Source: Macrostomum lignano
Lineage: Eukaryota
Direction of reading: 5' to 3'
NCBI GenBank assembly: GCA_002269645.1
Contig: NIVC01002753.1
Location: forward strand, 1,541 to 65,540
Length of the DNA stretch: 64,000 nt
Shown here: positions 8,101-63,857 of the stretch, in pieces
Layout of the letters: each line of letters opens with the position of its first letter
Position numbering within the stretch: position 1 is the stretch's first letter
Program-made: the position numbers and the translations under genes
Notes under the pieces: generated by a model
Told to the model about the DNA's origin: nothing
The model's input: only the letters and a program-made list of their open reading frames with translations
The model's database searches: none

Positions 8101-11100
8101 CGCCTCTTGATGGCGCTCCTTGACTGGCGCCCCTTGATGGCGCTCCCAGAATGGCGCCCCTTGATGGCGTTCTTTGACTGGCGCCTCTTGATGGCGCTCC
8201 CTGATTGGCGCCCCTCATTCAACATCATTTCAACCTTCACCGCAGCCTTCATTTACTGCCATCCCTACCATCCTATACTCAATCCATTCCAGTCATTCCA
8301 ACAGAAGTTCCCATTCAACAACAAGGAAGTGATAGCGATCTCCTGCAGCTGGTGCAAGGCCGCCTACCACAACAAGATCAACTGCTTCATGATGCATTTA
8401 ATTGAAGAGTCCTGCAACTTCGGTTCGCACGCCTCCATCATACTGCCGCCGTCGTGGATAATTAAAGTCCCCGGCAAAGCCAAGAGTCGTTTGTCGACCA
8501 GGCGTCGAAGCAGTCACGGAAAGACGTCGTTTAAGCGTCGAAAATCCAAGACCGGATTGCAGGTGCCGGCCAACGCTGCCGCCGCTGCTGCCGCCGCCGC
8601 CGCCGCCGCCGCTGCCGCCGCTGTGGACTCGAAACAGGTCGTCGGCGGTGGCGGCGACGGTGGAAGTCCGCCTAATGGATCCCAGGGTGCCACCGCCGCA
8701 GCCATTGCTGTTGTTGGCACCGTCAGTGCCTCCGCATCAGGTTTGTTGGTGGCCTGGGGTAGAGTGGGTGATTGAGTAGAGTGGGTGATGGAGTAGAGTG
8801 GGTGATTGAGTAGGAGTGGGTGATTGAGTAGAGTGGCTGATTGAGTAGAGTGGGTGATTGAGTAGAGTGGGTGATTGAGTAGAGTGGGTGATTGAGTAGG
8901 AGTGAGTGATTGAGTAGTGGGTGATTGAGTAGAGTGGGTGATTGAGTAGGAGTGGGTGATTGAGTAGAGTGGGTGATTGAGTAGGAGTGAGTGATTGAGT
9001 AGAGTGGGTGATTGAGTTGAGTGGGTGTTTGAGTAGAGTGAGTGATTGAGTAGAATGGCTGATTGAGTAGAGTGGGTGATTGAGTAGAGTGGGTGATTGA
9101 GTAGAGTGAGTGATTGAGTAGAGTGGGTGATTGAGTAGAGTGGGTGATTGAGTAGAGTGGGTGATTGAGTAGAGTGGGTGATTGAGTAGAGTGGGTGATT
9201 GAGTAGAGTGAGTGATTGAGTAGAGTGGGTGATTGAGTAGAGTGGGTGATTGAGTAGAGTAGGTGATTGAGTAGAGTGGGTGATTGAGTAGAGTAGGTGA
9301 TTGAATAGAATGGGTGATTGAGTAGAGTGGGTGATTGAGTAGAGTGGGTGATTGAGTAGAATGGGTGATTGAGTAGAGTGGGTGATTGAGTAGAGTGGGT
9401 GATTGAGTAGAGTGGGTGATTGAGTAGAGTGGGTGATTGAGTAGGAGTGAGTGATTGAGTAGTGGCTGATTGAGTAAGAGTGGGTGATTGAGTAGAGTGG
9501 GTGATTGAGTAGGAGTGAGTGATTGAGTAGTGGCTGATTGAGTAGGAGTGGCTGATTGAGTAGAGTGGGTGATTGAGTAGAGTGAGTGATTGAGTAGAGT
9601 GGGTGATTGAGTAGAGTGGGTGATTGAGTAGAGTAGGTGATTGAGTAGAGTGGGTGATTGAGTACGCTCGTAGAGTGGGTGATTGAGTAGAGTGGCTGAT
9701 TGAGTAGAGTGGGTGATTGAGTAGAGTGGGTGATTGAGTAGAGTGGGTGATTGAGTAGAGTGGGTGATTGAGTAGAGTGGGTGATTGAGTAGAGTGGGTG
9801 ATTGAGTAGGAGTGGGTGATTGAGTAGAGTGGGTGATTGAGTAGAGTGGGTGATTGAGTAGAGTGGGTGATTGAGTAGAGTAGGTGATTGAGTAGAGTGG
9901 GTGATTGAGTAGAGTGGGTGATTGAGTAGAGTGGGTGATTGAGTAGAGTGGGTGATTGAGTAGAGTGGGTGATTGAGTAGAGTGGGTGATTGAGTAGAGT
10001 GGGTGATTGAGTAGAGTGGGTGATTGAGTAAGAGTGGGTGATTGAGTAGAGTGAGTGATTGAGTAGAGTGGGCAGGGAAGTACGGTAGAGTGGTAGACTC
10101 TTCCAGGAGAAATAGATGATCAAGCATCAAACAGTCTGAATCGCTCATTCCTAGAATCTCACCTCTTCTCCCCCTCCCCCCGACCTTGCGCAGCCGCCGC
10201 CTTAGCCCAGAGCGCCGCCCAGAGCACGCCGTTCATGATCAAACCGGTGCCGTCGCCACACGTCCGACCAGTGCTGGTGTTCATCAACCCAAGGTCCGGC
10301 GGCAATCAGGGCGCCAAGCTGATGCACAAATTCCTGTGGCTGTTGAACCCGCGACAAGTGTTCGACATGGCCCAGCACGAGCCCTCGTTTGCCTTGGAAC
10401 TGTTTCGCAAGGTGCCGAATCTGAGGATACTGGTGTGCGGAGGCGACGGCACTGCAGGCTGGGTGCTGTCTACCATAGACAGGCTGGGCATCAGTCCCTG
10501 TCCACCGGTTGCCATTCTGCCGCTGGGCACTGGTAACGATCTGGCCAGAACGTTAAACTGGGGTGCCGGGTACACTGACGAGCCGTTGTCTAAGATTCTC
10601 TGCTGCGTTGAAGAGGGTCGGGTAGTGCAGCTGGACCGGTAAGCGAGGCTGCGTCTGCTACTGCCGCTTGTCCTAGAAATTTTTCCATAATGTACGACCT
10701 GAGCATCGCAGCTAATCTACCCATGAGAATCGTGCCTAATCTATCCATGAGAATCGTGCCTAATCTATCCATGAGAATCGTGCCTAATCTACCCATGAGA
10801 ATCGTGCCTAATCTACCCATGAGAATCGTGCCTAATCTACCCATTAGAATCGTGCCTAATCTACCCATGAGAATCGTGCCTAATCTACCCATGAGAATCG
10901 TGCCTAATCTACCCATGAGAATCATGCCTAATCTACCCATGAGAATCGTGCCTAATCTACCCATGAGAATCGTGCCTAATCTACCCATGAGAATCGTGCC
11001 TAATCTACCGATAAGAATCGTGCCTAATCTACCCATGAGAATCATGCCTAATCTACCCATGAGAATCGTGCCTAATCTATCCATGAGAATCGTGCCTAAT

Positions 11101-14100
11101 CTACCAATGAGAATCGTGCCTAATCTACCCATGAGAATCGTGCCTAATCTATCCATGAAAATCGTGCCTAATCTACCCATGAGAATCGTGCCTAATCTAC
11201 CCATGAGAATCGTGCCTAATCTACCCATGAGAATCGTGCCTAATCTATCCATGAGAATCGTGCCTAATCTACCAATGAGAATCGTGCCTAATCTACCCAT
11301 GAGAATCGTGCCTAATCTACCCATGAGAATCGTGCCTAATCTACCAATCAGAATCGTGCCTAATCTACCCATGAGAATCGTGCCTAATCTACCCATGAGA
11401 ATCGTGCCTAATCTACCGATAAGAATCGTGCCTAATCTACCCATGAGAATCGTGCCTAATCTACCCATGAGAATCGTGCCTAATCTACCCATGAGAATCG
11501 TGCCTAATCTACCCATGAGAATCGTGCCTAATCTACCCATGAGAATCGTGCCTAATCTATCCATGAGAATCGTGCCTAATCTACCCATAAGAATCGTGCC
11601 TAATCTACCCATGAGAATCGTGCCTAATCTACCCATGAGAATCGTGCCTAATCTAACCATGAGAATCGTGCCTAATCTACCCATGAGAATCGAGCCTAAT
11701 CTATCCATGAGAATCGTGCCTAATCTATCCAAGAGAATCGTGCCTAATCTACCGATAAGAATCGTGCCTAATCTACCCATGAGAATCGTGCCTAATCTAC
11801 CGATGAGAATCGTGCCTAATCTACCCATGAGAATCGTGCCTAATCTACCCATGAGAATCGTGCCTAATCTATCCATGAGAATCGTGCCTAATCTACCAAT
11901 GAGAATCGTGCCTAATCTACCCATGAGAATCGTGCCTAATCTACCCATGAGAATCGTGCCTAATCTACCCATGAGAATCGTGCCTAATCTACCCATGAGA
12001 ATCGTGCCTAATCTACCCATGAGAATCGTGCCTAATCTACCCATGAGAATCGTGCCTAATCTACCCATGAGAATCGTGCCTAATCTACCCATGAGAATCG
12101 TGCCTAATCTACCCATGAAAATCGTGCCTAATCTACCCATGAGAATCGTGCCTAATCTACCCATTAGAATCGTGCCTAATCTACCCATGAGAATCGTGCC
12201 TAAACTATCCATGAGAATCGTGCCTAATCTACCCATGAGAATCGTGCCTAATCTACCCATGAGAATCGTGCCTAATCTACCAATGAGAATCGGGCCTAAT
12301 CTACCCATGAGAATCGTGCCTAATCTACCCATGAGAATCGTGCCTAATCTACCCATGAGAATCGTGCCTAATCTACCCATGAGAATCGTGCCTAATCTAC
12401 CCATGAGAATCGTGCCTAATCTACCCATGAGAATCGTGCCTAATCTACCCATGAGAATCGTGCCTAATCTACCCATGAGAATCGTGCCTAATCTACCCAT
12501 GAGAATCGTGCCTAATCTACCCATGAGAATCGTGCCTAATCTACCCATGAGAATCGTGCCTAATCTACCCATGAGAATCGTGCCTAATCTACCCATGAGA
12601 ATCGTGCCTAATCTACCCATGAGAATCGTGCCTAATCTACCCATGAGAATCGTGCCTAATCTACCCATGAGAATCGTGCCTAATCTACCCATGAGAATCG
12701 TGCCTAATCTACCCATGAGAATCGTGCCTAATCTACCCATGAGAATCGTGCCTAATCTACCCATGAGAATCGTGCCTAATCTACCCATGAGAATCGTGCC
12801 TAATCTACCCATGAGAATCGTGCCTAATCTACCCATGAGAATCGTGCCTAATCTACCCATGAGAATCGTGCCTAATCTACCCATGAGAATCGTGCCTAAT
12901 CTACATAGAAGCTACATGTAGTTTATTAAAAGATTTGTATTGTATTCTTTGTTGGCTTCCCATCGAAGGGCGCTGATTGCTAGTTTATATCAAATTTTGC
13001 ACAGCTCAATAATTATCTGTAATTATCAGTACGGGCGTTAATCTACCTACCTGCCTGCCCCACTCATCAGGTGGAACATCACGGTGGAGCCCAACCAGGA
13101 CTGCCAGCAGGAGCCGGACCCCACCGACAGGAGCACCGGCCGGCCCTACCTCAGCGTGTTTAACAACTATTTCAGTCTGGGTGCTGACGCTGCCGTGGCT
13201 TTAGAATTTCACGAATCCAGAGGTACAAAAAAGTGTTTACCTATGGCCGTGTCGGATTTATTTACAACTGACAGCTGACTTTTTCTATTTATTAGTTTCT
13301 TACTAACCGAATGTTTTCTGTGTGGGTACTTTTAAACTTGTTTATCTAACTGAGCCGCTCTCTTGTTTACAGAAGCAAATCCGGAGCGTTTTAACAGTCG
13401 GTTAAGGAATATCATGTTTTATGCTGGGGTAAGTTTTTAGTCACGCCTGTGAAGTAGCTATGACTGTTTTTTATGTTTGTAGAATTTTGCAGAGATCTAA
13501 TATTCGACAATTATGATTGATTAAGTAAATACACTGACTGACTGACTGACTGACTGACTGACTGACTGACTGACTGACTGACTGACTGACTGACTGACTG
13601 ACTGACTGACTGACTGACTGACTGACTGACTGACTGACTGACTGACTGACTGACTGACTGACTGACTGACTGACTGACTGACTGACTGACTGACTGACTG
13701 ACTGACTGACTGACTGACTGACTGACTGACTGACTGACTGACTGACTGACTGACTGACTGACTGACTGACTGACTGACTGACTGACTGACTGACTGACTG
13801 ACTGACTGACTGACTGACTGACTGACTGACTGACTGACTGACTGACTGACTGACTGACTGACTGACTGACTGACTGACTGACTGACTGACTGACTGACTG
13901 ACTGACTGACTGACTGACTGACTGACTGACTGACTGACTGACTGACTGACTGACTGACTGACTGACTGACTGACTGACTGACTGACTGACTGACTGACTG
14001 ACTGACTGACTGACTGACTGACTGACTGACTGACTGACTGACTGACTGACTGACTGACTGACTGACTGACTGACTGACTGACTGACTGACTGACTGACTG

Positions 14101-17100
14101 ACTGACTGACTGACTGACTGACTGACTGACTGACTGACTGACTGACTGACTGACTGACTGACTGACTGACTGACTGACTGACTGACTGACTGACTGACTG
14201 ACTGACTGACTGACTGACTGACTGACTGACTGACTGACTGACTGACTGACTGACTGACTGACTGACTGACTGACTGACTGACTGACTGACTGACTGACTG
14301 ACTGACTGACTGACTGACTGACTGACTGACTGACTGACTGACTGACTGACTGACTGACTGACTGACTGACTGACTGACTGACTGACTGACTGACTGACTG
14401 ACTGACTGACTGACTGACTGACTGACTGACTGACTGACTGACTGACTGACTGACTGACTGACTGACTGACTGACTGACTGACTGACTGACTGACTGACTG
14501 ACTGACTGACTGACTGACTGACTGACTGACAGACAGACAGACAGACAGACCGAACTTCCGAACAAAGAAACCGAACAAACCGAACTTCCGCATCCCGCAG
14601 GAAGGCTCGCGGTCCATAATTAAGCGTCCCTGGCGCGAACTGAGCCAAGTGGTTAACCTGGAGGTGAGCCAACTTTTTTCAAAAAAATTCATTGTCGATG
14701 ACTCATCTTGCAGTTTAATTTGCAGTCTTCACTGTCAAACTAAGTTATAGAATGTCAGATTTTTGCCAATGAATTCTTTCTAACTGAACAAATTGCATCT
14801 CAGTGTCTGATGCCAGCCATCGTTCCTCTCTCCCATCTCCACGGATAGGGTTTCGTTTTTCCCATTTGACTCAAAATGTACTCAAATTGGGTAAAAAATA
14901 CCATTTGAGTCGCATCCAAGTTCCTAAAGCTCTCACTTACTTAATTAGTTCTGCCTAATTAGCCGAGTTGCGTGCACACAGATTTTCCTAATATAGAGAG
15001 AGAGAAAGTTTTCTAGACTCTTCTTCGCAGTGAGCTCAATTTTAATTGAAAACGGAATTGCCCCAACAGCCCTATTGTTGATTCTGTGGGACTCCGCCTG
15101 TCTCCGCCTCCGTTAGTCATCGTGACATCGTGCGTGCATCAGTTTTTTTGTCCCTTCCTATTCCCTCTATTTAATCATTTATTTTATTCCAATATTTAAA
15201 AGTCAATTATTTAGGCAAGGCAGGCATTAGGCGGGGGAGCTTGTGTCACAGTCGGAATACTCATTTTTTTCTATAGTCTGTCTAAATTAAAGTTGACTGG
15301 GTTGTCTGTCTCTGTATTAAATTGCGAGAGAATAAATTCTTTTATTTCTAATTTCAAAACGTTTTTGCATTTGCTTCCATTGTATTTTAGCATTATTTGT
15401 ACTAGCTCGTAAATCGCTATTGAGAAACCGGGGTTGTACTTTTCTGCTCAATCATTTGTCTATCAAATCTGTTTTCTTAGAATTCACGTTAGAATTTCTT
15501 AGAATTTGTTTTTTTTCTTTTTTTCTTAGAAACCATCCGATTTTCTCGAAATTAGTTTTCAATTTTCTTAGAATCAATCCAGTTTTCTTGGAAACTTCTG
15601 TTTGTTAGAATCGATCCATCCAGATTTCTTGGAATATTTTTTGTAGATTTTTTAGAATTTAGCCAGTTTTCTTGGCATCTGTTTCTACTTTCTTAGAATC
15701 AATTCAGATTTTTTGGAATCTTCTCTGTTTATTAGAATCAATTCAGATTTCTTTGTACTCTTTTCTATTTCTTAGAATCTACCCATATTTCTTGGAATAT
15801 TTTCTGCTTCTTAGAATCAATCCAGTTTTTTTGGAAACTTCTGCTTCTTAGAACCGATCCATCCAGATTTCTTTGAATCTGTTGCTTTTTTCTTACAATT
15901 TAGCCAGTTTTCTTGGAATATTTTCTGTTTCTTAGAATTTAGCCAGTTTTCTTGGAATCTGTTTCTACTTTCTTAGAATAAATTCAGATTTGTTGGAATC
16001 TTCTCTGTTTCTTAAAATCAATTCAGATTTATTTGTACTCTTTTCTGTTTCTTAGAATTTCGCCAGTTTTCTTGGAATATTTTCTGTTTCTTAGAATTTA
16101 GCCAGTTTTCTTGGAATATTTTCTGTTTCTTAGAATTTAGCCAGTTTTCTTGGAATATTTTCTGTTTCTTAGAATCTATACAGATCAAGGATCATATATA
16201 CACAAGATAAGCCACTCACAAACCACTTATTTGGACAAAGAAGATCATTTGAAAAATAATTGCAACTCGCGACAGCGTGAAAATCAGTTATTGAATTCAG
16301 TTTCCTCAATAGTCTCCGTAGTGCATGCATCATTTCTAATTTTATTAGGTATTTAATCTAAAGTCTAAGATGAAGGTAATATATAAGATTCATAATCCAG
16401 ATTTCTTTTTGGATCTGTTGAATTTTAAAATAAATTATCTTGATCTCTTAGAATCTGCCTGGTTTCCTTATAAACCATCTATATTTCTTATGTAGCTTCC
16501 TATTTCTAGTTTTCTTGGAAAACCGCTCATATTTCTCAGGACCCACGTTGATATTCTCAACCTAGGTTGCTTTATATATTTGTAATGTCTTAAAAAATCA
16601 AAATGAATTTCTCGGATAAAGATTACTCACAATCCAGTTCATTCTGGTTCCATCGTTAATCGTCTTCTTGACGCAAGGATATGCATTAAACTAATTATGC
16701 CAACGAAACCATTCCAGTGCGACAGCGTCAACATGACCGATCGAATACGCGAACTTCGAGTCAATTCCATCTTGTTTTTAAACATTCCCAAGTACAGCGC
16801 CGGCGCCATGCCCTGGGGCAATCCGACTGGTAGTCAGGGGTTCGAACCCCAACGACCCGACGATGGTTACGTTGAAGTGATCGGATTCAGTTCGAGTCAT
16901 TTGGTAATCATTGGTTGTTTAAATGATTTGTGTCGTTCAAATTGAGCTTATAAGATGGTTAAATGGGAGCTTATAAGATGGTTAAATGGAGCTTATAAGA
17001 TGGTTAAATGGGAGCTTATAAGATGGTTAAATGGGAGCTTATAAGATGGTCAAATGGAGCTTATAAGATGGTTAAATGGGAGCTTATAAGATGGTTAAAT

Positions 17101-23100: not shown

Positions 23101-26100
23101 AGTAGTTAAAGTAATTAAACAAAAATTTCCAGGTCGTTTTTTCAACAAAAAAATTTCATTGTCTTTATTCAAATCATTGAAGCATAAAGTCAATCATTTT
23201 AATATATGGAGTTAGTTTCATAATTTCCTGGTATCTCCATAAAGTGCGCACATCTTTTAGAACCAACTAAGCCTTCAAAACCTTTCTTAGAAACGAAGTC
23301 ATCCGTCTTTCGAATTCTATTTTGACTATTGAGCTCGTAAACATCCGATTATGTGTTGACCCTGAATCTAAAATTGGTTTTTTAAACTTTTACTAATATG
23401 GATCGTTTTTTTTCATTATTGCCTACTTATCTAGAATGTGTCAGTAATAGGAACCAAGCTTACATCTAAAATTAAACATTTGATTCTCGATAAGTAAACA
23501 TGTTTTACATTTACAGTGCGCAACGAATTAAAGCCAGACGTCAATTTGCCAGAAACGTTAGGAAATTTTGTCTGACTCCTATCCCAGCCGAGTAGTAAGG
23601 ACAGCAGAGATTTTTTAAAATTAACCATGAAGAGTTAATTCAGAATTTTATTGAAATCATAACCAACGTTTTAAACTAAAATTCTGTGTTTAAACATTGT
23701 ATTTACAGTTTAACAATTTAGCAATACCTTTGTGCGTGACTTCAAAAACTTTCGAAAATCTATCCGACCGCTGTAATGCTCCAATTGTGATTTTTAAAAA
23801 AAACATTTTTAGCGACGGGGACTATGGATTCAGTCAGGGGGCCGCACCGAGTAGTCAGCCGCTAATTATGGAACGGCTGCGCATTCAGGTGTCCGTCATC
23901 TCCATGACCGATTACGAGAGTCTGCAGTACGACAAGGAAAAGCTGCGCCTAGCTTGTAAGTTTTACCGGAACTTGAAGTTTCATTTTGAGGTTTCTGAGA
24001 TATTTTTATTAAATTGTTTTTTTTTGCAGCGTACCCTCTGGGTATCATCTTGGTTGAAGTGGACTCGGATCTCGAACACGTTCGAACCCATATTGATCGA
24101 CTCGCATCGGTAAGCTGTTCTGAATGTAGGTAGTTGTTGCTGTTGTTGAGACGGGGTGCCTAGCAGTGCTGGGGCGTGGATGAGCCCGGAAGAGGATTTG
24201 TCGTTGGGGTGGGGGGGGCCTGGGTGGACTCGGTCCTAGCACCGTCCCTGATTCCACTATGGGTTGGCGGTGTCTTAGTCCATAGACATTGAGCTGGTAG
24301 CCCCAATTAGGTTTCGCTACCAGGCAATGAGTCCTGGTCCCAATCGTGGCCTCTCGGGCTTCGGCCCCTGGCAGTATGGCCCACTTCAATATCTTAGCGG
24401 CAGAGCCCTTCCCTGGGCTGATCCGCGGGGCCCCTAGGCTACCCACCCTCAACAACAACAAGAGGATTGCTGGAAGCAGAGTGGGTCCACCAGGGGTTAC
24501 TAGACCCGGGCCACTACCTGAGAAATTGGAATCCTCCTTTTCGTAGCACAAGGAAGAGAGCCTAAGCCATAATAGGCAAGATTGGGCTCCATCAAGGGCG
24601 AAAATTTTTGGGGGTCTTTACTGCGAAGCTCAGTTCTTAGTCTTAGTTTGTTGTTCAAGTCCGGCCTCCTCAGAGAACATCATCCACTGACGCAAAATAC
24701 CCTTTGGACAGGGTCGCTGTAGGCAGCCGAAAGAGATCGATTGCACCACCGGGCGGTGCCGCAGACAGGTGTAATAGCCTGTCGCCAAGGCCGCCGAAAG
24801 CATTTCCACAGCCTAGGATCCCCGAATTCCTGGCGGGTTCCACTGGCAGGGTACCAGCTTCTGAGGCACAAGCCTTCTAGGTGGTCCATTTACCAGCTCT
24901 CAACTCAAGTAGGTTCACCTAGCGCAATGGTAGCTCAAAGCCGCTAACCAGCAATGCAAGATCACCAGTCAGAAGCCCCATGCTGCACCACAACCCTCCG
25001 GGCTTAGTACGCCAACTCTGGCAATCTCAAAAAGACCGTCTTTAATGTAGGTAGTTACGACAGCCTAAAAAATAACTCGTCTAACTAACAAGCTTTCAAA
25101 GCAATGAAAATATTATAGTTGATAGCAAGTCAACTTTACATGTTTTCCTTTTGATATTTTGTTTTAAGCTCTGTAGTTCCTTTTCGATTACTAAAATTTT
25201 AATTGTGGAAAAATATCGTTTAAAGGACACCTGCTTGATCACGCAAACCGGAAAATCTCGACTGTCAAACAACTGGGTCTTTCTAGACTGTAAGTAAACA
25301 CTGTTTAAAATTTGTCAGTTTTTATGAATAGCTAATATTAAAACAAGCGTGATTAATCTGTGCACTGTGTCCCACAGCCACCACAGCTGAACGATTCTTC
25401 CGAATTGACAAGCAGCAAGAGTCGTTGCACTTCATCACGGACATCAGCTCGGAAGATCTGTACGTTCTGGACCCGGAGCTGATCACTGGCAGCTCTGACG
25501 AACGACTGTTCCCAGTTGAGCGGGTGCACAGCGAGGAAACTCTGCCAAAGATGCTAGTCCATAGCCCGGATATTGAGGTTGCAGCCAGTCCCGATCCCGA
25601 CTATCGCTGCTCCAGGTAAGTAAGCCTTGGTTAATTAATTCCTGGTTTTGTTAATATTTAGTAAGAAAATAAACGTCAACACAAACATAAAAAGTAAACC
25701 TTGTTTAATTCTAGCCAACGCGTTTCGTCAAACACTAGACGTCGTCAGGGCAAATTCACTCAACCTAAGATCATACCACCAATATATTTAAGCAAAAATC
25801 ACTGTACAATCCAGAGGCGGGTCAAATCAGTCCGGTAGAATTAAGAAAGTGCCAAGTACACAACAAAGTGAGAGAGAAAAAAAAAATAAATAGGCACGGC
25901 TCTGCTCACAGTACTCTTAGCTCACGCTCCACCCCATTGCCAGCAAGCTGCACATTCAGGTTGGGTTTGTGCATTCTGATATACGAAGCTTCGATAATCT
26001 TAAGCTTATGGTCAAATTTGCACCCATCCAGCACTTTAAAGAGCTGAATCGGTTCACCATCACAGCATTTTTTACAAACAAGCAGATGGTCATTAATCGC

Positions 26101-29100
26101 AGAGCTTTTTAGCCAATGTTCCCTAGCTCTAGTGTGCAGGTGTCGCTTCGTTTTTCCAATATAGGAAACGCTCTGATCCTCAGAGCAGCGAAATTGGTAA
26201 ACAACACCAGCCCTTAGAGCAAGTGGAACAGCTGACTTGAGCCTGCTAGCATAGCGACCGATCTTTTCGGTGCGAAACACAATCCTAACGGTGCACTTAA
26301 GCCATTTGCTAAACGTTTTCTCAAGTTTTTTCCTGAAGTCAAGCGAAGCGTTGCCAAAAAAAGGGAGAACCAACAGAGCGTCCCAAGAATCTATCTCCGG
26401 TTGCCTGGGTCTCGCATCGCTGGAAAATTTCAGCGCTGGAAAAAGATAGATTCTGGAAAAAAATGGCTTAAGTGCACCGTTAGGATTGTGTTTCGCACCG
26501 AAAAGATCGGTCGCTATGCTAGCAGGCTCAAGTCAGCTGTTCCACTTGCTCTAAGGGCTGGTGTTGTTTACCAATTTCGCTGCTCTGAGGATCAGAGCGT
26601 TTCCTATATTGGAAAAACGAAGCGACACCTGCACACTAGAGCTAGGGAACATTGGCTAAAAAGCTCTGCGATTAATGACCATCTGCTTGTTTGTAAAAAA
26701 TGCTGTGATGGTGAACCGATTCAGCTCTTTAAAGTGCTGGATGGGTGCAAATTTGACCATAAGCTTAAGATTATCGAAGCTTCGTATATCAGAATGCACA
26801 AACCCAACCTGAATGTGCAGCTTGCTGGCAATGGGGTGGAGCGTGAGCTAAGAGTACTGTGAGCAGAGCCGTGCCTATTTATTTTTTTTTTCTCTCTCAC
26901 TTTGTTGTGTACTTGGCACTTTCTTAATTCTACCGGACTGATTTGACCCGCCTCTGGATTGTACAGTGATTTTTGCTTAAATATATTGGTGGTATGATCT
27001 TAGGTTGAGTGAATTTGCCCTGACGACGTCTTGTGTTTGACGGGGCGCGTTGGCTAGAATTAAACAAGGTTTACTTTTTATGTTTGTGTTGACGTTTATT
27101 TTCTTACTATTTGTTCGACGAGCGACACTTCCACAATTGATAATATTTATACTAGGAGTAAAGTGCTACTATTCTTTAAGCAGTTCTAATGCATGCTTGA
27201 TAAATTTGTTTAAATTGCGCGAGTGAAACAGTTTACTATTGAAAGTAAACTTGCATGTTTATTAACTTATAGCATGGTTTTTCGATAGAAAAAGTACATG
27301 TATTGAATCTTATCGGCTTTTGAAATTAGTCTGCATAAATTTATCCTATTTTAACCTTTTCTGCATGCGACAAGTGTATAGCTTGTCGTACTTTACCTAA
27401 TATAAATATTTCTAAATATATACTACTTAACATTCGAAGGCTATTTAATTTTTTCGCTAATAAATTTAATGCACTAGCACTATATTAATCATCATCTTTT
27501 CTAATCAGGTTATTGTATTAATTTAAATTTTGTGCGTTCTATATATTTACTTACACAACGACACGTTGTTGCACTTATTGCGTTTAAAACGGATTTTCCG
27601 CGGAAATTCCGCGGTTTTTCCTTGTCTTAAATCACCTATACGAATATGTACAAATATATGTAGGCCATCAGCCAGAAAGGGCAGCGAGGCGGTTGCCAAT
27701 CCGCCCCCTTCGGCTGGCTTGCGTCTTCGCTTGCGTCGAGCCACCGCCATTTCGGACAATTTTCTGGCCAAAACAACCGAACAGCAAGAGAAGCCGGCTT
27801 ATTCGAGGTTGGGAAAGAAAGGGTTGCTCGTGAGATAGAGGCTTGCTAGTGTTGGAGAGTGAATGTATCGATTGTGTTATGTGTCATAACCTCACTTTTC
27901 TGTCTATTTATGCCGCCATGTGAACTCTGGTATAGCAAGTAATGAAGTTCCAGTATCTAAAATGATAAATTATTAAGATTCGAAAAGTCTAATTATTGTA
28001 ATGACTATTTGGGAATGACTCTCAAGGTCACTTTGAATGAAAGCACGCCACTGCCTCGTGGAATTATCTCAGATGTCCGCACAACACCAAGCAGTGAAGT
28101 GATTTCAATGTGACCTTGATAGAATTTCCAGCATTTAGAAACCGACGGAAAAACATTTCAATGTCACCTGAGTTCACATGTCAGAATCAGAATAATGTCA
28201 CTGTTTTGCCTAGTTGGTTGTGTCATCTGACTTTTTTATTCATTTTGTTTTGATTAATTGATAATTAGTCAAAGCGCTTGCTGTTATTGTGACGTTAAAT
28301 TTTACGTGTCCGTACATGTACTTGTAACTTGTGACGTACTTTTCGATTTGTCGCTGCATAGTTTAGATAGTTTAGCGCATGCGTACGCTGGGGGGCCGTA
28401 GCCCAGCGGTAGCGCAGCTGCTCTGGTGTGCCAGCGACCCAGGCTCGATTCCAAGTGCAGCCACATTAATTTGGGGCTGAATTAGAATTTCGGCTTGGCT
28501 CGCTTGTGCAATTAACGCCATTGAGAGCCAACCCCCCAAGGCGCAGTGAAGTGTACATGCCTAACGATAATATAAAGTTAGGGCCGCTGTACACTCCTGT
28601 GTGAGTGTGTGCCTGCGTAACGTATCCGCGCGCTTGTATGCCTGCTCAGGGGAGTCGGCGGAATGGGCAGTAATGCCTCTCGCCGGTTGTGTGCCAATGA
28701 CGCTTAAATTGCGCCAGGGTGCACACAACCCCCCTGCCTCTAATAAAAAAGGCCAATTTAAACAGATAAGGAAATTAAAGTTCTGGGACTATAAAACCGA
28801 GCAAATGTACATTCATCTAAGAGCAGTTGTTGGTTCTCATCAACTTAAGGAATAAGGGCGAGGGTTTTTATTACCCCCAATGTACATTACATGCTTGTAT
28901 ATTGGAGATTAATTGCAAGATAAAAACAAGTGTACAACGTATCTTGGGTTGTTGGTAAGACATAATAATTAGGCTTAATGCGATATATTTTAAGTTTTAG
29001 TGGGTGTTTAATTTTACAAATGAAATTAATTAAACTTGTGCATCAAAAGTTATTGGATGGCTTAAAGTGTACATTAATGCAATCTACATAAGAGCATTTT

Positions 29101-35560: not shown

Positions 35561-36014
35561 CGACATCTGACAATCAATCAAACGTGTCGTGAGCTCAGCG
35601 CACAGAAAAACAAAGAAGTTTGGCAGTAATGAGGGAGGCCCTGTCATATAGTAAAGAATCAATTACATTTGACTCGGCAGGGTCAAACAAAAAGAGTGCG
35701 CCCACCCTACAGTATGTTGTCCAATTCTGTTTAGCTATCAACCAGCTGCTTAGCTCGACTGCATGGGCGGTGCGATGACACATGCAGCGCGTGGGCGTAT
35801 TTTTTTTAGTGAGAAACTGCTCTCGCTTTCTTGCGTATAGATAAAATCCCATGCCTTCAGTGGACATTTCTTCCCTTTAATTGACTGGTTGCACAGCTTG
35901 GCCATGTGCGTGGGAGGCTGGCACTTTGGGAGCTCTTTCAACAGCAGTGTCAACTTCATCCCATTCCTTTGATCCCCTCTTTGTCGCCTCCTTGTCTCAA
36001 CTATCTTGTCTATC

Positions 36015-38345
36015 CCGTCTCATCCGTCTGCTCACCCCTCTGCCCAATACTCTGCTACATCCTGTCTGTTTCATCCTCTGCTTCATCCTCTGCTTCATCC
36101 TCTGCTTTATCCTCTGCTTTATCCTCTGCTTCATCCTCTGCTTTATCCTCTGCTTCATCCTCTGCTTTATCCTCTGCTTCATCCTCTGCTTTATCCTCTG
36201 CTTTATCCTCTGCTTCATCCTCTGCTTTATCCTCTGCTTCATCCTCTGCTTTATCCTCTGCTTCATCCTCTGCTTTATCCTCTGCTTTATCCTCTGCTTC
36301 ATCCTCTGCTTTATCCTCTGCTTTATCCTCTGCTTCATCCTCTGCTTCATCCTCTGCTTCATCCTCTGCTTCATCCTGTGTGTCTCATCCTCTGCTTTAT
36401 CCTCTGCTTTATCCTCTGCTTTATCCTCTGCTTCATCCTCTGCTTCATCCTCTGCTTCATCCTGTGTGTCTCATCCTCTGCTTCATCCTGTGTGTCTTAT
36501 CCTCTGCTTCATCCTGTGTGTCTCATCCTCTGCTTCATCCTGTGTGTCTCATCCTCTGCTTCATCCTGTGTGTCTCATCCTCTGCTTCATCCTGTGTGTC
36601 TCATCCTCTGCTTCATCCTGTGTGTCTCATCCTCTGCTTCATCCTGTCTGTCTCATCCTCTGCTTCATCCTGTGTGTCTCATCCTCTGCTTCATCCTCTG
36701 CTTCATAAATCGTGACTTTGACAATCGGCACTGTGTGTCTCATCCTCTGCTTCATCCTGTCTGTCTCATCCTCTGCTTCATCCTGTCTGTCTCATCCTCT
36801 GCTTCATCCTGTCTGTCTCATCCTCTGCTTCATCCTGTGTGTCTCATCCTCTGCTTCATCCTGTGTGTCTCATCCTCTGCTTCATCCTGTCTGTCTCATC
36901 CTCTGCTTCATCCTGTGTGTCTCATCCTCTGCTTCATCCTGTGTGTCTCATCCTCTGCTTCATCCTGTGTGTCTCATCCTCTGCTTCATCCTGTGTGTCT
37001 CATCCTCTGCTTCATCCTGTGTGTCTCATCCTCTGCTTCATACTGTGTGTCTCATCCTCTGCTTCATCCTGTGTGTCTCATCCTCTGCTTCATCCTGTGT
37101 GTCTCATCCTCTGCTTCATCCTGTCGGTTTCATCCTCTACTTCATCCTGTGTGTCTCATCCTCTGCTTCATCCTGTGTGTCTCATCCTCTGCTTCATCCT
37201 GTCTGTCTCATCCTCTGCTTCATCCTCTGCTTCATCCTGTGTGTCTCATCCTCTGCTTCATCCTCTGCTTCATCCTGTGTGTCTCATCCTCTGCTTCATC
37301 CTCTGCTTCATCCTGTGTGTCTCATCCTCTGCTTCATCCTCTGCTTCATCCTGTGTGTCTCGTCCTCTGCTTCATCCTGTGTGTCTCATCCTCAGCTTCA
37401 TCCTCTGCTTCATCCTGTGCGTCTCATCCTCTGCTTCATCCTGTCTGTCTCATCCTCTGCTTCATCCTCTGCTTCATCCTGTGTGTCTCATCCTCTGCTT
37501 CATCCTCTGCTTCATCCTGTCTGTCTCATCCTCTGCTTCATCCTCTGCTTCATCCTGTGTCTCATCCTCTGCTTCATCCTGTGTGTCTCATCCTCTGCTT
37601 CATCCTGTGTGTCTCATCCTCTGCTTCATCCTGTGTGTCTCATCCTCTGCTTCATCCTGTGTGTCTCATCCTCTGCTTCATCCTGTGTGTCTCATCCTCT
37701 GCTTCATCCTGTGTGTCTCATCCTCTGCTTCATCCTGTGTGTCTCATCCTCTGCTTCATCCTGTGTGTCTCATCCTCTGCTTCATCCTGTGTGTCTCATC
37801 CTCAGCTTCATCCTCTGCTTCATCCTGTGTGTCTCAACCTCTGCTTCATCCTGTGTGTCTCATCCTCTGCTTCATCCTGTGTGTCTCATCCTCTGCTTCA
37901 TCCTGTCTGTCTCATCCTCTGCTTCATCCTCTGCTTCATCCTGTGTGTCTCATCCTCTGCTTCATCCTGTGTGTCTCATCCTCTGCTTCATCCTGTGTGT
38001 CTCATCCTCTGCTTCATCCTGTGTGTCTCATCCTCTGCTTCATCCTGTGTGTCTCATCCTCTGCTTCATCCTGTATGTCTCATCCTCTGCTTCATCCTGT
38101 GTGTCTCATCCTCTGCTTCATCCTGTGTGTCTCATCCTCTGCTTCATCCTGTGTGTCTCATCCTCTGCTTCATCCTGTGTGTCTCATCCTCTGCTTCATC
38201 CTGTGTGTCTCATCCTCTGCTTCATCCTGTGTGTCTCATCCTCTGCTTCATCCTGTGTGTCTCATTCTCTGCTTCATCTTGTGTGTCCCACCCTTTTTCT
38301 CATCCTCTGCTACACCCTCTGTCTCACTCTGTCTCATCCTCTGTC
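36015..38345. repeat. Composite 12-bp TCATCCTCTGCT / 26-bp TCATCCTGTGTGTCTCATCCTCTGCT array
   Basis: Direct reading. Confidence 0.97.
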
Positions 38346-38879
38346 TTACCCTCTATCTCATTGTTTGTCCTTTCCTTTGCCGCACCGCAGAAACGCTACA
38401 ACCCTGCACTTTTATATATTGACGGTAAATCTAGGCCAAACAATTATAAGGTATGACTAATATTTTCTACAAAAATTCGTACAAATTTACAGTTGATTGA
38501 ACTCAAAAAATAGTCTATGAGTCCGCATGAAGCCCCCTACCCCGTCGTAGTCACATTTAGTGATTAAAGCATATTGGATATGTTTTGGCAGCAGGGGGGT
38601 AGGGGGGAACCTAAGGGCTAGAATCTAGATTAGGCTAGTGCTGAGGGGAGTACAGCGCATGCAGATGACCACCAGCCAAGGGTTGGGGCGCCAGACAGAC
38701 AGGCCAGGCAGACTGAGGAATGGGGTGTGGGGTGAGCGTGGGAGAGAGTGTTTCTAGGAAGTGCACGTGGTGGGGAAGTGGGAAATGCGGCGCTCATGGA
38801 GACCGAAACAGAGAACTCTCTGGATTGCCCAACTGCCAACTCATCAACAAGCAGTGCTGGTTGTTTGGCGTTGTAGCTT

Positions 38880-39062: not shown

Positions 39063-39805
39063 CAGTAATCAGTTGCCGACCCCTGCGCGGCCATAAATCG
39101 TGACTTTGACAATCGGCACTGCATGCAGATCCCTCGATCAAGATCTCCTTGAATAGGATAGAGAAACAGAGAGAGAGGGGGTTCAGTGAATTGAAATTGG
39201 CTCGGGGGGGGGGCAGAGGGGTAAAAGCTTTATTGGGAATGGACGAGACCCAAGCTCATGCTATTGGCTGGCTTGGTTCCGGGTGGGGCTATAGAAGGGA
39301 TGACAAACACAAGGGGTTGGTTGGTTGAAGGGAAGTGGGGAAGCACAGTTCAAAGAGCGTATTAACCCCCCCCCACCCAACCACACCGAAAAAGCCGTTC
39401 CGTCAGTTTCCTAATTTAGTGTATAAAACTGACTGACTGGACAAGGGCTTAAGGAAGGGAGCAACCCGAACGGAAAGGTTTAGCTTAAACGGTGCATCGC
39501 GGTTCAAGACTTGCTTCTGTCCTGTAAGGTACGCGTCCTACACGTACGAGGGTACTACAGCGTTTGATAGTGGAAGACCGGGTCGGATATTAAAACAGGT
39601 AAGTTTCAGTTTGCACTTTTGCAGATGAATAATACTAGTTAGTTAGAACTGATGTCACGTAGTTGAAAACAGCTGTACCTGTTTATTATAAACAATTAGT
39701 AGTCGAATTACCGTGCATGAGTATGTTGTACTTTGTTGAAATGTTTTGGATTGACAAGTGGGTAAATTAGCAATGAGTCATAGAAGTGCATTGCTCCTAA
39801 CTCGT

Positions 39806-40664
<859 letters not shown>

Positions 40665-41247
40665 CTTAATTAATAATCTCTCTCTCCCCACTGCCCTTTG
40701 TCCGGCCTCAATCATTCCCTGTCTCGGTCGCACTACTCTGTTGTCAATTCACCAGACTCGATTTAGGAGCAAGCTCACGAGCAAAGCTAAGCATGGATGA
40801 CGGGTCTATGAAAGGCAAGATTAGTCTTCAGTCTTTACCATCAGAGCACCTGGCCATCCATCAGGACGGACACAATAAAGAATGCTAATCTAGCTAGCTC
40901 ACAAGGCTGTGCCGCACGGGTGCCAGGTTAAAAAAGGCCGTACTAAGAGCTCAGAAGCGCCGTTTAATCATCAAGTTTACATAAAATCTTTTCCACTATC
41001 TACAGAGGTCTTTCTAATTTCTTTTTATAGCTTTTACAGTTTGGCTTGACTCTGAAGCCAAGGCTTGCAGCGACTGCCCATAGCATTTATTTTCCATCTT
41101 CAGCCTTCCGTACACTCGTTACCCCTACCTCACCACCTTGTCTATGCTGTTTATTTTCTTAATATGACAAGCGAAATATAGATGTGACTATAAGTGATCG
41201 ACTACAGATTGACACAGGTCCTATCCAAGGCTTCTATCCCTCCAGTT

Positions 41248-41820
<573 letters not shown>

Positions 41821-42155
41821 ATCAACCTCACTCCGGTTTCGTCACAGCCAAACAGGCTATTTTTGGTAGCACAGGAATGACGCACAGATTATCTGTGTAA
41901 CAAGAGCCAGTAAAATATTTCGTTGCAAAATATTTTTCAAGTTATTGTTGCCTCGCATCGGAGCTGCTATGACTTACTGACTGTGTTTATTAAACAGACA
42001 TTGACCTCCTCTTTAAGCTGCAGTCGTTAAACTTTCTGCGTAAATTAAAACTATTTATTTGTCGCTGAAAAGCTGCAAGGCTATAGAGCTTGAAGCAAAT
42101 TAGTTTTTGTCACGGTATAGTTTTCCACTATAGTCTAGATAGGTTGTGGATTAAA

Positions 42156-42461: not shown

Positions 42462-63857
<21,396 letters not shown>

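What the first reader, a model, noticed from the sequence alone, without database searches (positions are those of the whole stretch)
25714..27054. Hammerhead ribozyme pair in a host intron: intact antisense copy, core-destroyed copy on the host-sense strand
Seen: the two 649-bp arms of the Penelope-like inverted repeat are identical by manual comparison except for 4 bases, and all 4 lie within the 38-nt hammerhead motif of the right arm (27032 A>T in loop II; 27043-27045 AAA>GGG, turning the catalytic GAAA into GGGG). The left copy (minus strand, antisense to DGK) keeps a full CUGACGA...GAAA core. Known: PLEs carry minimal hammerheads with palindromic stem III that cleave mainly as dimers, and the GAA of the core is essential. 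Inference: only the copy that would be transcribed into DGK pre-mRNA has been knocked out, either by selection against host transcript cleavage or through ADAR-type A-to-G editing of the hairpin RNA before reverse transcription. This points to a possible host-versus-ribozyme safeguard.
Basis: partly seen in the sequence, partly recalled or inferred. Interest (0 to 1): 0.85.

Follow-up and report, generated by a model that had tools for sequence, protein, structure and literature searches.

The report
Twin Penelope retroelement ends, one dead ribozyme
Two truncated copies of a Penelope-like retrotransposon sit head-to-head in an intron of a diacylglycerol kinase gene; one copy's small hammerhead ribozyme carries a 4-base lesion, which is a real curiosity, but one locus gives no evidence that the host disabled it.

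Summary
Arms 25659-26307 and 26461-27109 are 645/649 complementary. The only differences are 27032 (T, expected A) and 27043-27045 (GGG, expected AAA), all inside the 38-nt motif.

The locus is a standard complex Penelope-like element (PLE) insertion: two 5'-truncated 3' ends joined head-to-head. The left copy is 802 nt on the minus strand and the right copy is 649 nt on the plus strand. Each carries a GIY-YIG remnant, a 3'UTR, a PLE-type minimal hammerhead and a 55-nt tail. It lies inside a type IV DGK gene on the plus strand.

The left motif meets every published sequence feature of PLE min-hammerheads, although Rfam models do not detect it. The right copy has lost A13, A14 and A15.1.

The host-safeguard reading is not supported:
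- It rests on one locus, and arm choice is a coin flip.
- One substitution would be enough to kill the core.
- Zero changes in the other 635 positions leave no time for several selected mutations.
- Monomeric min-hammerheads are inactive in vitro.
- In DGK pre-mRNA both arms would be locked in a 649-bp hairpin.

All four changes hit adenosines of the PLE sense RNA, and all keep or create pairs in a competing hairpin. I infer a single RNA- or cDNA-stage event. This is unproven, because no outgroup copies could be found.

The parts
25659..26460 (-). Left PLE copy: a 5'-truncated 3' end of a Penelope-like element, 802 nt, with its 3' end at 25659
   Evidence: Inverted repeat. The minus-strand frame stays open from the stop at 25906-25908 through the whole 'spacer' up to 26460, with a PLE-like [15 protein letters not shown] linker.
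26461..27109 (+). Right PLE copy: a 5'-truncated 3' end, 649 nt, with its 3' end at 27109. It is in the same sense as the host DGK gene.
   Evidence: It is identical to the left copy except at 4 positions.
25906..26373 (-). GIY-YIG endonuclease remnant of the left copy (C-terminus of the PLE ORF, stop codon included)
   Evidence: Pfam GIY-YIG PF01541, E=8.8e-7, 29.6 bits against a cut-off of 22.6. There are 1989 homologues. The long ones are 770-880 aa, with RVT_1 and the match at the extreme C-terminus.
26461..26862 (+). GIY-YIG endonuclease remnant of the right copy (stop codon included)
   Evidence: tblastn gives 100% identity over 133 aa; ORF list.
25714..25751 (-). Intact PLE-type minimal hammerhead. 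Helix I is GCC/GGC. CUGACGA is at 25748-25742, the extra C at 25741 and helix II GUC/GAC at 25740-25727. GAAA is at 25726-25723, the palindromic CGCG at 25722-25719 and U16.1-U17 at 25718-25717. The predicted cleavage site is 3' of 25717.
   Evidence: It is the only descriptor hit in the window, with 0 hits in 300 shuffles. The features match PMC4209133. There is no Rfam hit.
27017..27054 (+). Core-destroyed copy of the same motif. 27032 is A>U in loop II / the helix II extension. 27043-27045 are AAA>GGG (A13, A14, A15.1).
   Evidence: mismatch list. Searches show the four changes lock a competing hairpin (-7.5 kcal/mol).
25659..25713 (-). 55-nt 3' tail of the left copy, downstream of the hammerhead
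   Evidence: It is part of the perfect repeat. PLE RT initiates downstream of the HHR region (PMC11167929).
27055..27109 (+). 55-nt 3' tail of the right copy
25647..25652 (.). Possible target-site duplication TTTGTT, left copy. It is followed by 6 extra bases AATATT at 25653-25658.
   Evidence: Read directly from the sequence. This is a weak, T-rich 6-mer and counts as inference only.
27110..27115 (.). Possible target-site duplication TTTGTT, right copy
   Evidence: Read directly from the sequence. Inference only.
25425..25617 (+). Putative host exon ending at a consensus 5' splice site (CAG|GTAAGT), 41 nt upstream of the insertion
   Evidence: Open frame plus splice consensus. There is no Pfam support. 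The host strand is fixed by DAGK_cat at 10.2 kb, the DGKI domain at 23.8 kb and Ank at 30.9-31.4 kb, all on the plus strand.

Best explanation
This is one young, complex insertion of a canonical (RT plus C-terminal GIY-YIG) Penelope-like element into an intron of a type IV diacylglycerol kinase gene.

Two 5'-truncated cDNAs were primed outward-in from the two sides of the target break. They were joined head-to-head at 26460/26461. This gives 649-bp inverted arms, each ending in a 3'UTR, a PLE-type minimal hammerhead and a 55-nt tail.

The four differences between the arms are one clustered lesion in the right-hand cDNA. It destroys A13, A14 and A15.1 of the ribozyme core and freezes a competing hairpin. 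I infer that it arose at the RNA or cDNA stage of that retrotransposition event: adenosine-specific editing or modification, or RT misincorporation, or use of a sibling template RNA that already carried it. It would then be neutral for the host. That it lies on the DGK-sense strand would be coincidence.

Shown: the architecture, the host strand, the motif features and the effect of the changes on predicted folding. Inferred: a single insertion event, the timing and cause of the lesion, and its neutrality.
For: Architecture:
- The left ORF is open to the junction, so the spacer is PLE sequence.
- The GIY-YIG domain is confirmed. Homologues are 770-880-aa RVT_1 proteins with the match at the C-terminus.
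- Inverted 5'-truncated copies and tails are described as typical of PLEs (PMC8557442).
- A purified PLE protein cleaves and extends both DNA strands (PMC11167929).

Motif:
- It has CUGANGA, an extra nucleotide after A9, G10.1-C11.1, GAAA, a palindromic CGCG and UH. This matches PMC4209133.
- It is the single descriptor hit in the window, with 0 hits in 300 shuffles.

Lesion:
- All four changed bases are A on the PLE sense strand, where 7 of the 38 motif bases are A.
- All four keep or create pairs in a local RNA hairpin, three of them as G.U wobbles, which have no meaning in DNA.
- The stabilisation is -7.5 kcal/mol. Only 0.7% of random 4-substitution sets reach this, and the observed set ranks 2 of 81 at the same positions.
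- No local donor exists for a DNA template switch.
- There are 0 differences at the other 635 positions.

Neutrality:
- Monomeric min-HHRs are inactive in vitro.
- The arms are predicted to form a continuous hairpin in a plus-strand transcript.
Against: - No other copy of this PLE family could be retrieved. The ancestral state at the four sites is therefore inferred from the hammerhead consensus only. I cannot tell whether the T/GGG haplotype pre-exists in other genomic copies.
- A>U is not an ADAR change. The first edited A follows a G, which is a disfavoured context. The local hairpin is short for an ADAR substrate.
- The folding statistic was computed after seeing the data.
- The hammerhead region is not the most structured part of the element: 12% of 45-nt windows are as stable. 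A purely structure-directed lesion is therefore not compelled.
- An assembly or consensus error cannot be tested here.
- The target-site duplication is weak.
Confidence: 0.6

Rival explanations
1. Host safeguard. After insertion, natural selection fixed mutations that disable only the hammerhead that is transcribed as part of DGK pre-mRNA, because self-cleavage in the intron would reduce DGK mRNA.
For: The dead copy is on the DGK-sense strand. The lesion hits three invariant core positions. An intronic self-cleaving ribozyme can lower host gene output, as shown for the Cpeb3 HDV-like ribozyme (PMC10919898, abstract seen). Retrozymes are modestly depleted from Xenopus introns (bioRxiv 10.64898/2026.07.22.740005).
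Against: - There is one locus, and orientation is a 1-in-2 outcome.
- One substitution is enough to kill the core, yet four are present, including one outside the core.
- Zero differences elsewhere in 635 positions leave no time for several sequential fixations.
- Single min-HHRs do not cleave detectably in vitro.
- The sense motif would be buried in a 649-bp hairpin in the pre-mRNA.
- Sense intronic hammerheads are conserved in amniotes.
Confidence: 0.05
2. Specifically ADAR-type A-to-I editing of the template RNA before reverse transcription. The inosines are copied as G into the cDNA, leaving a DNA footprint.
For: Three of the four changes are A>G on the PLE sense strand. The middle A lies opposite a C in the competing hairpin, and an A.C mismatch is a favoured ADAR target (established knowledge). 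The other two lie opposite U.
Against: - The A>U change at 27032 is unexplained.
- The first A has a 5' G.
- The local helix is only about 8 bp with two mismatches.
- Only 3 of the 159 As in the 649-nt arm changed. Long-dsRNA hyperediting, such as of a hairpin transcript from an inverted source locus, is therefore excluded.
Confidence: 0.15
3. A DNA-level event after integration. This could be a single complex multinucleotide mutation, or a short-tract ectopic gene conversion from a diverged paralogous PLE copy elsewhere in the genome.
For: The clustering is far tighter than independent mutation would give. PLE min-HHRs are reported to be extremely variable within genomes (PMC4209133), so diverged donors probably exist.
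Against: No donor exists in the 64-kb window. Pairing compatibility through G.U wobbles and restriction to sense-strand adenosines are not expected from a DNA-level process.
Confidence: 0.15
4. Assembly or consensus artefact. Both arms are really identical, and the four differences are polishing or basecalling errors in a repeat that is hard to assemble.
For: Inverted PLE structures are noted to cause problems in whole-genome assemblies (PMC8557442). The differences are confined to one short patch.
Against: Mis-mapping between arms would tend to make them identical, not create differences. AAA>GGG plus A>T is not a typical homopolymer or indel error. The repeat itself is not a fold-back artefact, because the flanks are unique and the centre is asymmetric.
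Confidence: 0.1

Closest known systems
Complex tandem or inverted insertions of canonical EN+ Penelope-like elements (pLTRs, with an adjacent inverted 5'-truncated copy)
   Same: Both copies are 5'-truncated, lie in inverted orientation and are immediately adjacent. Both have complete 3' ends with a short tail. The ORF ends in a C-terminal GIY-YIG, and an HHR sits near the 3' end. All of this matches PMC8557442 and PMC4209133.
   Different: No full-length or RT-bearing copy is present. The unit is just two 3' fragments joined head-to-head. The PLE clade (Penelope/Poseidon, Neptune or Nematis) could not be assigned, because the RT and linker are missing.
PLE minimal hammerhead ribozymes (min-HHR; Cervera and De la Pena 2014)
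   Same: The CUGANGA and GAAA boxes, an unpaired nucleotide between A9 and G10.1, the G10.1-C11.1 pair, a palindromic helix III (CGCG), a short helix I, and dual motifs on opposite strands 100-700 bp apart are all described in that paper.
   Different: Helix II is short: 3 bp plus a U.U and one A-U, compared with 6-8 bp in the Schistosoma and Drosophila families. The two motifs are about 1.3 kb apart. One copy has GGGG instead of GAAA. Activity is untested.
Intronic self-cleaving ribozymes that affect host mRNA (Cpeb3 HDV-like ribozyme; amniote HH9/HH10 hammerheads in RECK, CTCL and DTNB)
   Same: A sense-strand ribozyme motif inside an intron of a protein-coding gene.
   Different: Those ribozymes are conserved, full-length, monomer-active and retained by the host. 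Here the sense copy is a dead, recent transposon fragment, and the live copy is antisense.
Twin priming in LINE-1 inversions (own knowledge: Ostertag and Kazazian 2001)
   Same: Both strands of the target break prime reverse transcription, which gives an inverted structure in a single event.
   Different: L1 twin priming copies two different parts of one RNA. Here both arms contain the same 3'-terminal 649 nt, so two full 3'-end primings are needed. That fits the two-strand extension seen for a PLE protein.

Membership tests
Canonical EN+ Penelope-like element | C-terminal GIY-YIG endonuclease domain at the end of the single ORF | tested here: met
   Pfam PF01541, E=8.8e-7, above the curated cut-off. 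The domain runs to the stop codon in both arms.
Canonical EN+ Penelope-like element | PLE/TERT-like reverse transcriptase upstream of the endonuclease | tested here: inconclusive
   It is absent from the window because both copies are 5'-truncated. By proxy, all 10 homologues scanned (364-879 aa) have RVT_1 N-terminal to the region matching the query, which lies at their C-terminus. PLE-specific RT motifs were not examined.
Canonical EN+ Penelope-like element | 5'-truncated copies arranged as direct or inverted pseudo-LTR structures | tested here: met
   Two truncated copies of 802 and 649 nt lie head-to-head. The arrangement is described in PMC8557442.
Canonical EN+ Penelope-like element | Hammerhead motif in the repeat, near the 3' end | tested here: met
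   The motif lies 55 nt from the 3' end of each copy.
Canonical EN+ Penelope-like element | Target-site duplication flanking the whole unit | tested here: inconclusive
   TTTGTT occurs on both sides, but with 6 extra bases on the left and in a T-rich context.
PLE-type minimal hammerhead (type I) | Conserved boxes C3-U4-G5-A6-N7-G8-A9 and G12-A13-A14 with A15.1-U16.1 and H17 | tested here: met
   Left copy: CUGACGA ... GAAA CGCG U U. Right copy: the first box is met; the second box is NOT met (GGGG).
PLE-type minimal hammerhead (type I) | Extra unpaired nucleotide between A9 and G10.1, plus a G10.1-C11.1 pair | tested here: met
   The sequence is CUGACGA-c-GUC...GAC-GAAA. The feature is listed in PMC4209133.
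PLE-type minimal hammerhead (type I) | Palindromic positions 15.2-16.2 / helix III that allow dimer formation | tested here: met
   ACGCGU is self-complementary. The dimer energy could not be evaluated, because the two-strand structure is not nested.
PLE-type minimal hammerhead (type I) | Self-cleavage at H17, as a dimer | not testable with these tools
   This needs in vitro transcription. In silico, the hammerhead helix II has only about 0.19 probability in the isolated 45-mer, against 0.79 for a competing hairpin.
Rfam hammerhead families (Hammerhead_1, _3, _II, HH9, HH10) | A match to the covariance model at or near the gathering score | tested here: not met
   There is no hammerhead hit at gathering thresholds in the window, none at E<=10 in 1.6 kb, and none at E<=10 in a 76-nt search. 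This is expected for motifs that lack helix III and the loop contacts, but it is a negative result.
ADAR editing footprint in a retro-copied sequence | Changes are exclusively A>G on one strand, lie within dsRNA, and depleted of a 5' G neighbour | tested here: inconclusive
   Three of four changes are A>G and one is A>U. All are on the sense strand. One site has a 5' G. The local helix is about 8 bp with mismatches.

The most novel reading that the evidence does not exclude
The two arms are sibling cDNAs of one retrotransposition event that differ only inside the ribozyme, and only at adenosines. They could therefore be a direct snapshot of an RNA-stage, adenosine-directed process aimed at the PLE hammerhead. 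That process could be host editing or modification read out by the RT, or an element-intrinsic one. It would diversify or inactivate the ribozyme at each round of copying. It would also give a mechanism for the unexplained hypervariability of PLE min-hammerheads within genomes that Cervera and De la Pena noted.
Probability: 0.12. Interest if true: 0.6.

Novelty: new member of a known kind. Interest (0 to 1): 0.3.

Why it matters
As it stands, this is an ordinary Penelope-like insertion with its expected hammerheads.

Its one unusual feature is that two otherwise identical arms differ only by a 4-base, adenosine-only lesion in the ribozyme that is compatible with RNA pairing. If this recurred across many twin insertions, it would time the origin of [19 protein letters not shown] to the retrotransposition step itself. 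That would bear on an open question about why PLE hammerheads are so variable and what they are for.

I found no such analysis in the literature I could search; the 2026 retrozyme preprint contains no occurrence of the word 'orientation'.

Tried and rejected
Searches for outgroup copies, all unsuccessful:
- The search for homologous proteins with the GIY-YIG fragment found nothing.
- A protein scan and a DNA pattern scan of viral contigs found nothing.
On reading, it is an unrelated bacterial-looking contig, so a chance match.
- Exact-product look-ups for five window ORFs found nothing. These included the two 45-aa ORFs that span each hammerhead.

Distant relatives:
- The closest relative found through the representatives library is P0121, at 61% aa identity. 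It sits on a 1.7-kb Logan contig that is 66.5% identical in DNA and ends in a microsatellite before any hammerhead, so it cannot serve as an outgroup.
- Three distant full-length relatives (L003-L005) were scanned. Only L005 shows a CUGAUGA-g-helix II-GAAA motif 3' of the ORF.

Ideas considered and rejected:
- Quasi-palindrome or template-switch correction. The new bases are not the Watson-Crick complement of the opposing hairpin arm, and no donor k-mer of 9 nt or more exists in the window.
- Fold-back sequencing artefact as the origin of the repeat. The flanks are unique and the centre is asymmetric.
- A structure-directed lesion at the most stable RNA element. The hammerhead window is only in the top 12%.

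Other attempts that led nowhere:
- Organism identification failed. The DGK exon's best hits are about 70% identical and come from scattered metazoans. The plexin exon gave no hit.
- The energy of the hammerhead dimer could not be computed, because the structure is non-nested.

Full report
OBSERVATION. The region was read directly. It was then scanned for inverted repeats and compared base by base. There is one inverted repeat, with arms at 25659-26307 and 26461-27109, each 649 nt. The arms are perfectly complementary except at four positions. Position 27032 is T where A is expected, and 27043-27045 are GGG where AAA is expected. The left-arm partners are 25736 and 25725-25723. If four differences were independent and uniform, falling within 14 nt of 649 would have a probability of about 4e-5 (my arithmetic). 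The cluster is therefore real and non-random.

ANATOMY.
- Each arm encodes the C-terminal part of an ORF with a GIY-YIG endonuclease domain (Pfam PF01541, E=8.8e-7).
- The ORF is followed by about 155 nt of 3'UTR, the 38-nt motif and a 55-nt tail.
- On the minus strand the reading frame of the left copy stays open across the entire 153-nt 'spacer', up to 26460. The spacer is therefore just the extra 5' length of the left copy.
- The locus is thus two 5'-truncated copies, 802 nt on the minus strand and 649 nt on the plus strand, joined head-to-head at 26460/26461 with their 3' ends pointing outwards.
- The flanks are unique sequence. A weak candidate target-site duplication, TTTGTT, lies at 25647-25652 and 27110-27115, with six extra bases on the left.
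- An exhaustive HMMER search of 1.84 billion representative proteins found 1989 relatives of the fragment.
- All ten relatives I scanned (364-879 aa) carry an RVT_1 reverse-transcriptase domain N-terminal to the region matching the fragment, which lies at their C-terminus. RT followed by a C-terminal GIY-YIG is the architecture of canonical Penelope-like elements.
- Frangieh et al. show that a purified PLE protein cleaves and extends both DNA strands and starts reverse transcription internally near the 3' end (PMC11167929).
- I infer that the two arms are sibling cDNAs of one insertion event.

THE MOTIF. Read on the minus strand, the left copy is GCC-CUGACGA-c-GUC-UAGUGUUU-GAC-GAAA-CGCG-U-U-GGC. 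It meets each sequence feature that Cervera and De la Pena give for PLE minimal hammerheads (PMC4209133):
- both conserved boxes;
- an unpaired nucleotide between A9 and G10.1;
- the G10.1-C11.1 pair;
- a palindromic helix III, which implies action as a dimer;
- a short helix I.

That paper also notes dual motifs on opposite strands a few hundred bp apart. A descriptor I wrote from those features hits once in the 64-kb window, at this site, and never in 300 dinucleotide shuffles. I wrote the descriptor after seeing the sequence. On the negative side, no Rfam hammerhead model matches at gathering thresholds, at E<=10 in 1.6 kb, or at E<=10 in 76 nt. Activity cannot be tested here. In the right copy G12 is kept, but A13, A14 and A15.1 are G. 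By established hammerhead mutagenesis (own knowledge) that abolishes catalysis.

HOST CONTEXT. Three Pfam domains all lie on the plus strand: DAGK_cat at 10.2 kb, a DGK-iota-like domain at 23.8 kb and ankyrin repeats at 30.9-31.4 kb. The insertion therefore lies inside a type IV diacylglycerol kinase gene. The insertion begins 41 nt after a consensus CAG|GTAAGT. The exon status of 25425-25617 is only inferred.

WHAT THE FOUR CHANGES DO.
- All four changed bases are adenosines of the PLE sense RNA (A>U, and A>G three times). Only 7 of the 38 motif bases are A.
- In the isolated RNA, the intact motif already prefers a competing hairpin, CGUCUAGU/ACGAAACG. Its pair probability is about 0.79, against about 0.19 for hammerhead helix II.
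- The four changes convert the two mismatches of that hairpin into pairs, and convert two A-U pairs into G.U pairs.
- This stabilises the hairpin by 7.5 kcal/mol. Only 0.7% of random four-substitution sets do as well, and the observed set ranks 2 of 81 possible replacements at the same positions.
- G.U compatibility has meaning only at the RNA level.
- No donor sequence for a DNA template switch or local conversion exists in the window.
- The hammerhead region is not the most structured part of the element.

ORIGIN OF THE LESION.
- There are zero differences at the other 635 paired positions, so the 95% upper bound on background divergence is about 0.5%. Two to four independent post-insertion substitutions in 38 nt are therefore very unlikely, with or without selection.
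- I consider a single event most likely. I favour the RNA or cDNA stage of the retrotransposition itself: editing or modification of adenosines, RT misincorporation, or a sibling template RNA that already carried the patch.
- ADAR-type editing fits three changes, including one at an A.C mismatch. It does not fit the A>U change. One site has a 5' G and the helix is short.
- Hyperediting of a long dsRNA is excluded, because only 3 of the 159 As in the 649-nt arm changed.
- A DNA-level complex mutation, a short conversion from an unseen paralogue, or an assembly error remain possible.
- I could not obtain any other copy of this family to polarise or count the variant.

THE SAFEGUARD IDEA. It does not follow from this locus, for these reasons:
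- Arm choice is a coin flip.
- One substitution would be enough to kill the core.
- Single min-hammerheads show no detectable cleavage in vitro, and even dimers cleave poorly.
- Only one sense copy would be present in the pre-mRNA.
- In a plus-strand transcript the whole right arm is predicted to pair with the left arm (MFE -1311 kcal/mol). The changed positions form G.U wobbles and one U.U mismatch, so the motif could not fold as a ribozyme in either state.
- Sense-strand intronic hammerheads are conserved in amniote genes (PMC6155905).

The general concept is not absurd. The intronic Cpeb3 ribozyme does lower host expression (PMC10919898), and retrozymes are modestly depleted from Xenopus introns. 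It needs a genome-wide orientation test, which I could not run.

COMPARISON AND NOVELTY. The element is a new member of a known kind: a canonical PLE insertion with PLE-type min-hammerheads. It differs from described examples only in details. Helix II is short, no RT-bearing copy is present, and one core is dead. The unexplained residue is the hammerhead-confined, adenosine-only, pairing-compatible lesion between otherwise identical sibling arms. This echoes the unexplained hypervariability of PLE hammerheads noted in 2014. It would be interesting only if it proved recurrent.

VERDICT. The structural interpretation is supported. The functional interpretation is not supported by the evidence available. 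Interest is modest (0.3).

Noticed in passing
window 25617-25659: The 1.45-kb inverted repeat begins only 41 nt downstream of a consensus 5' splice site (CAG|GTAAGT at 25617/25618, plus strand). A long hairpin this close to a donor site might affect splicing of that intron. The exon itself (25425-25617) has no Pfam support.
   Followed up: partly
window 27014-27058 (and 25710-25754 minus strand): The hammerhead sequence competes with an alternative hairpin (CGUCUAGU/ACGAAACG) that is already the dominant predicted fold of the intact copy. This may be a built-in inactive conformer, as in viroid hammerheads.
   Followed up: partly
window 25647-25658 and 27110-27115: A candidate 6-bp target-site duplication, TTTGTT. 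Six extra bases, the palindrome AATATT, lie between it and the left copy's 3' end.
   Followed up: partly
window 10580-12900, 13380-14560, 35900-38400, 39720-40670, 41200-41900, 46000-47800, 55500-56400: Very long micro- and minisatellite arrays fill the introns. One is a 24-nt unit repeated about 95 times, and several are 8-nt units repeated more than 100 times. They create long spurious ORFs on both strands.
   Followed up: no
window 42462-63300 (+): A second host gene lies downstream on the same strand. It is a plexin (PSI, IPT/TIG and two Plexin_cytopl exon matches). Its cytoplasmic exon found no relatives at E<=1e-15 in the word-indexed protein search, which is odd for so conserved a domain.
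   Followed up: partly
L005 2704-2747 (ENA ERZ17100596 contig): A distant full-length relative of the PLE (769-aa RT protein) has a CUGAUGA-g-helix II-GAAA motif about 320 nt downstream of its stop codon. This is consistent with the same ribozyme placement in the wider family.
   Followed up: partly
L002 1660-1723 (Logan SRR31628435 contig): The closest relative found (61% aa identity) runs into a CT-rich microsatellite right after its stop codon. This fits the reported PLE insertion bias towards microsatellites.
   Followed up: no
window 27081-27109: An ATG in the 3' tail opens a short frame ([10 protein letters not shown]...) that runs off the element's end. In Poseidon PLEs the ORF starts close to the hammerhead, so the tail may contain the start of the next tandem unit's ORF.
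   Followed up: no
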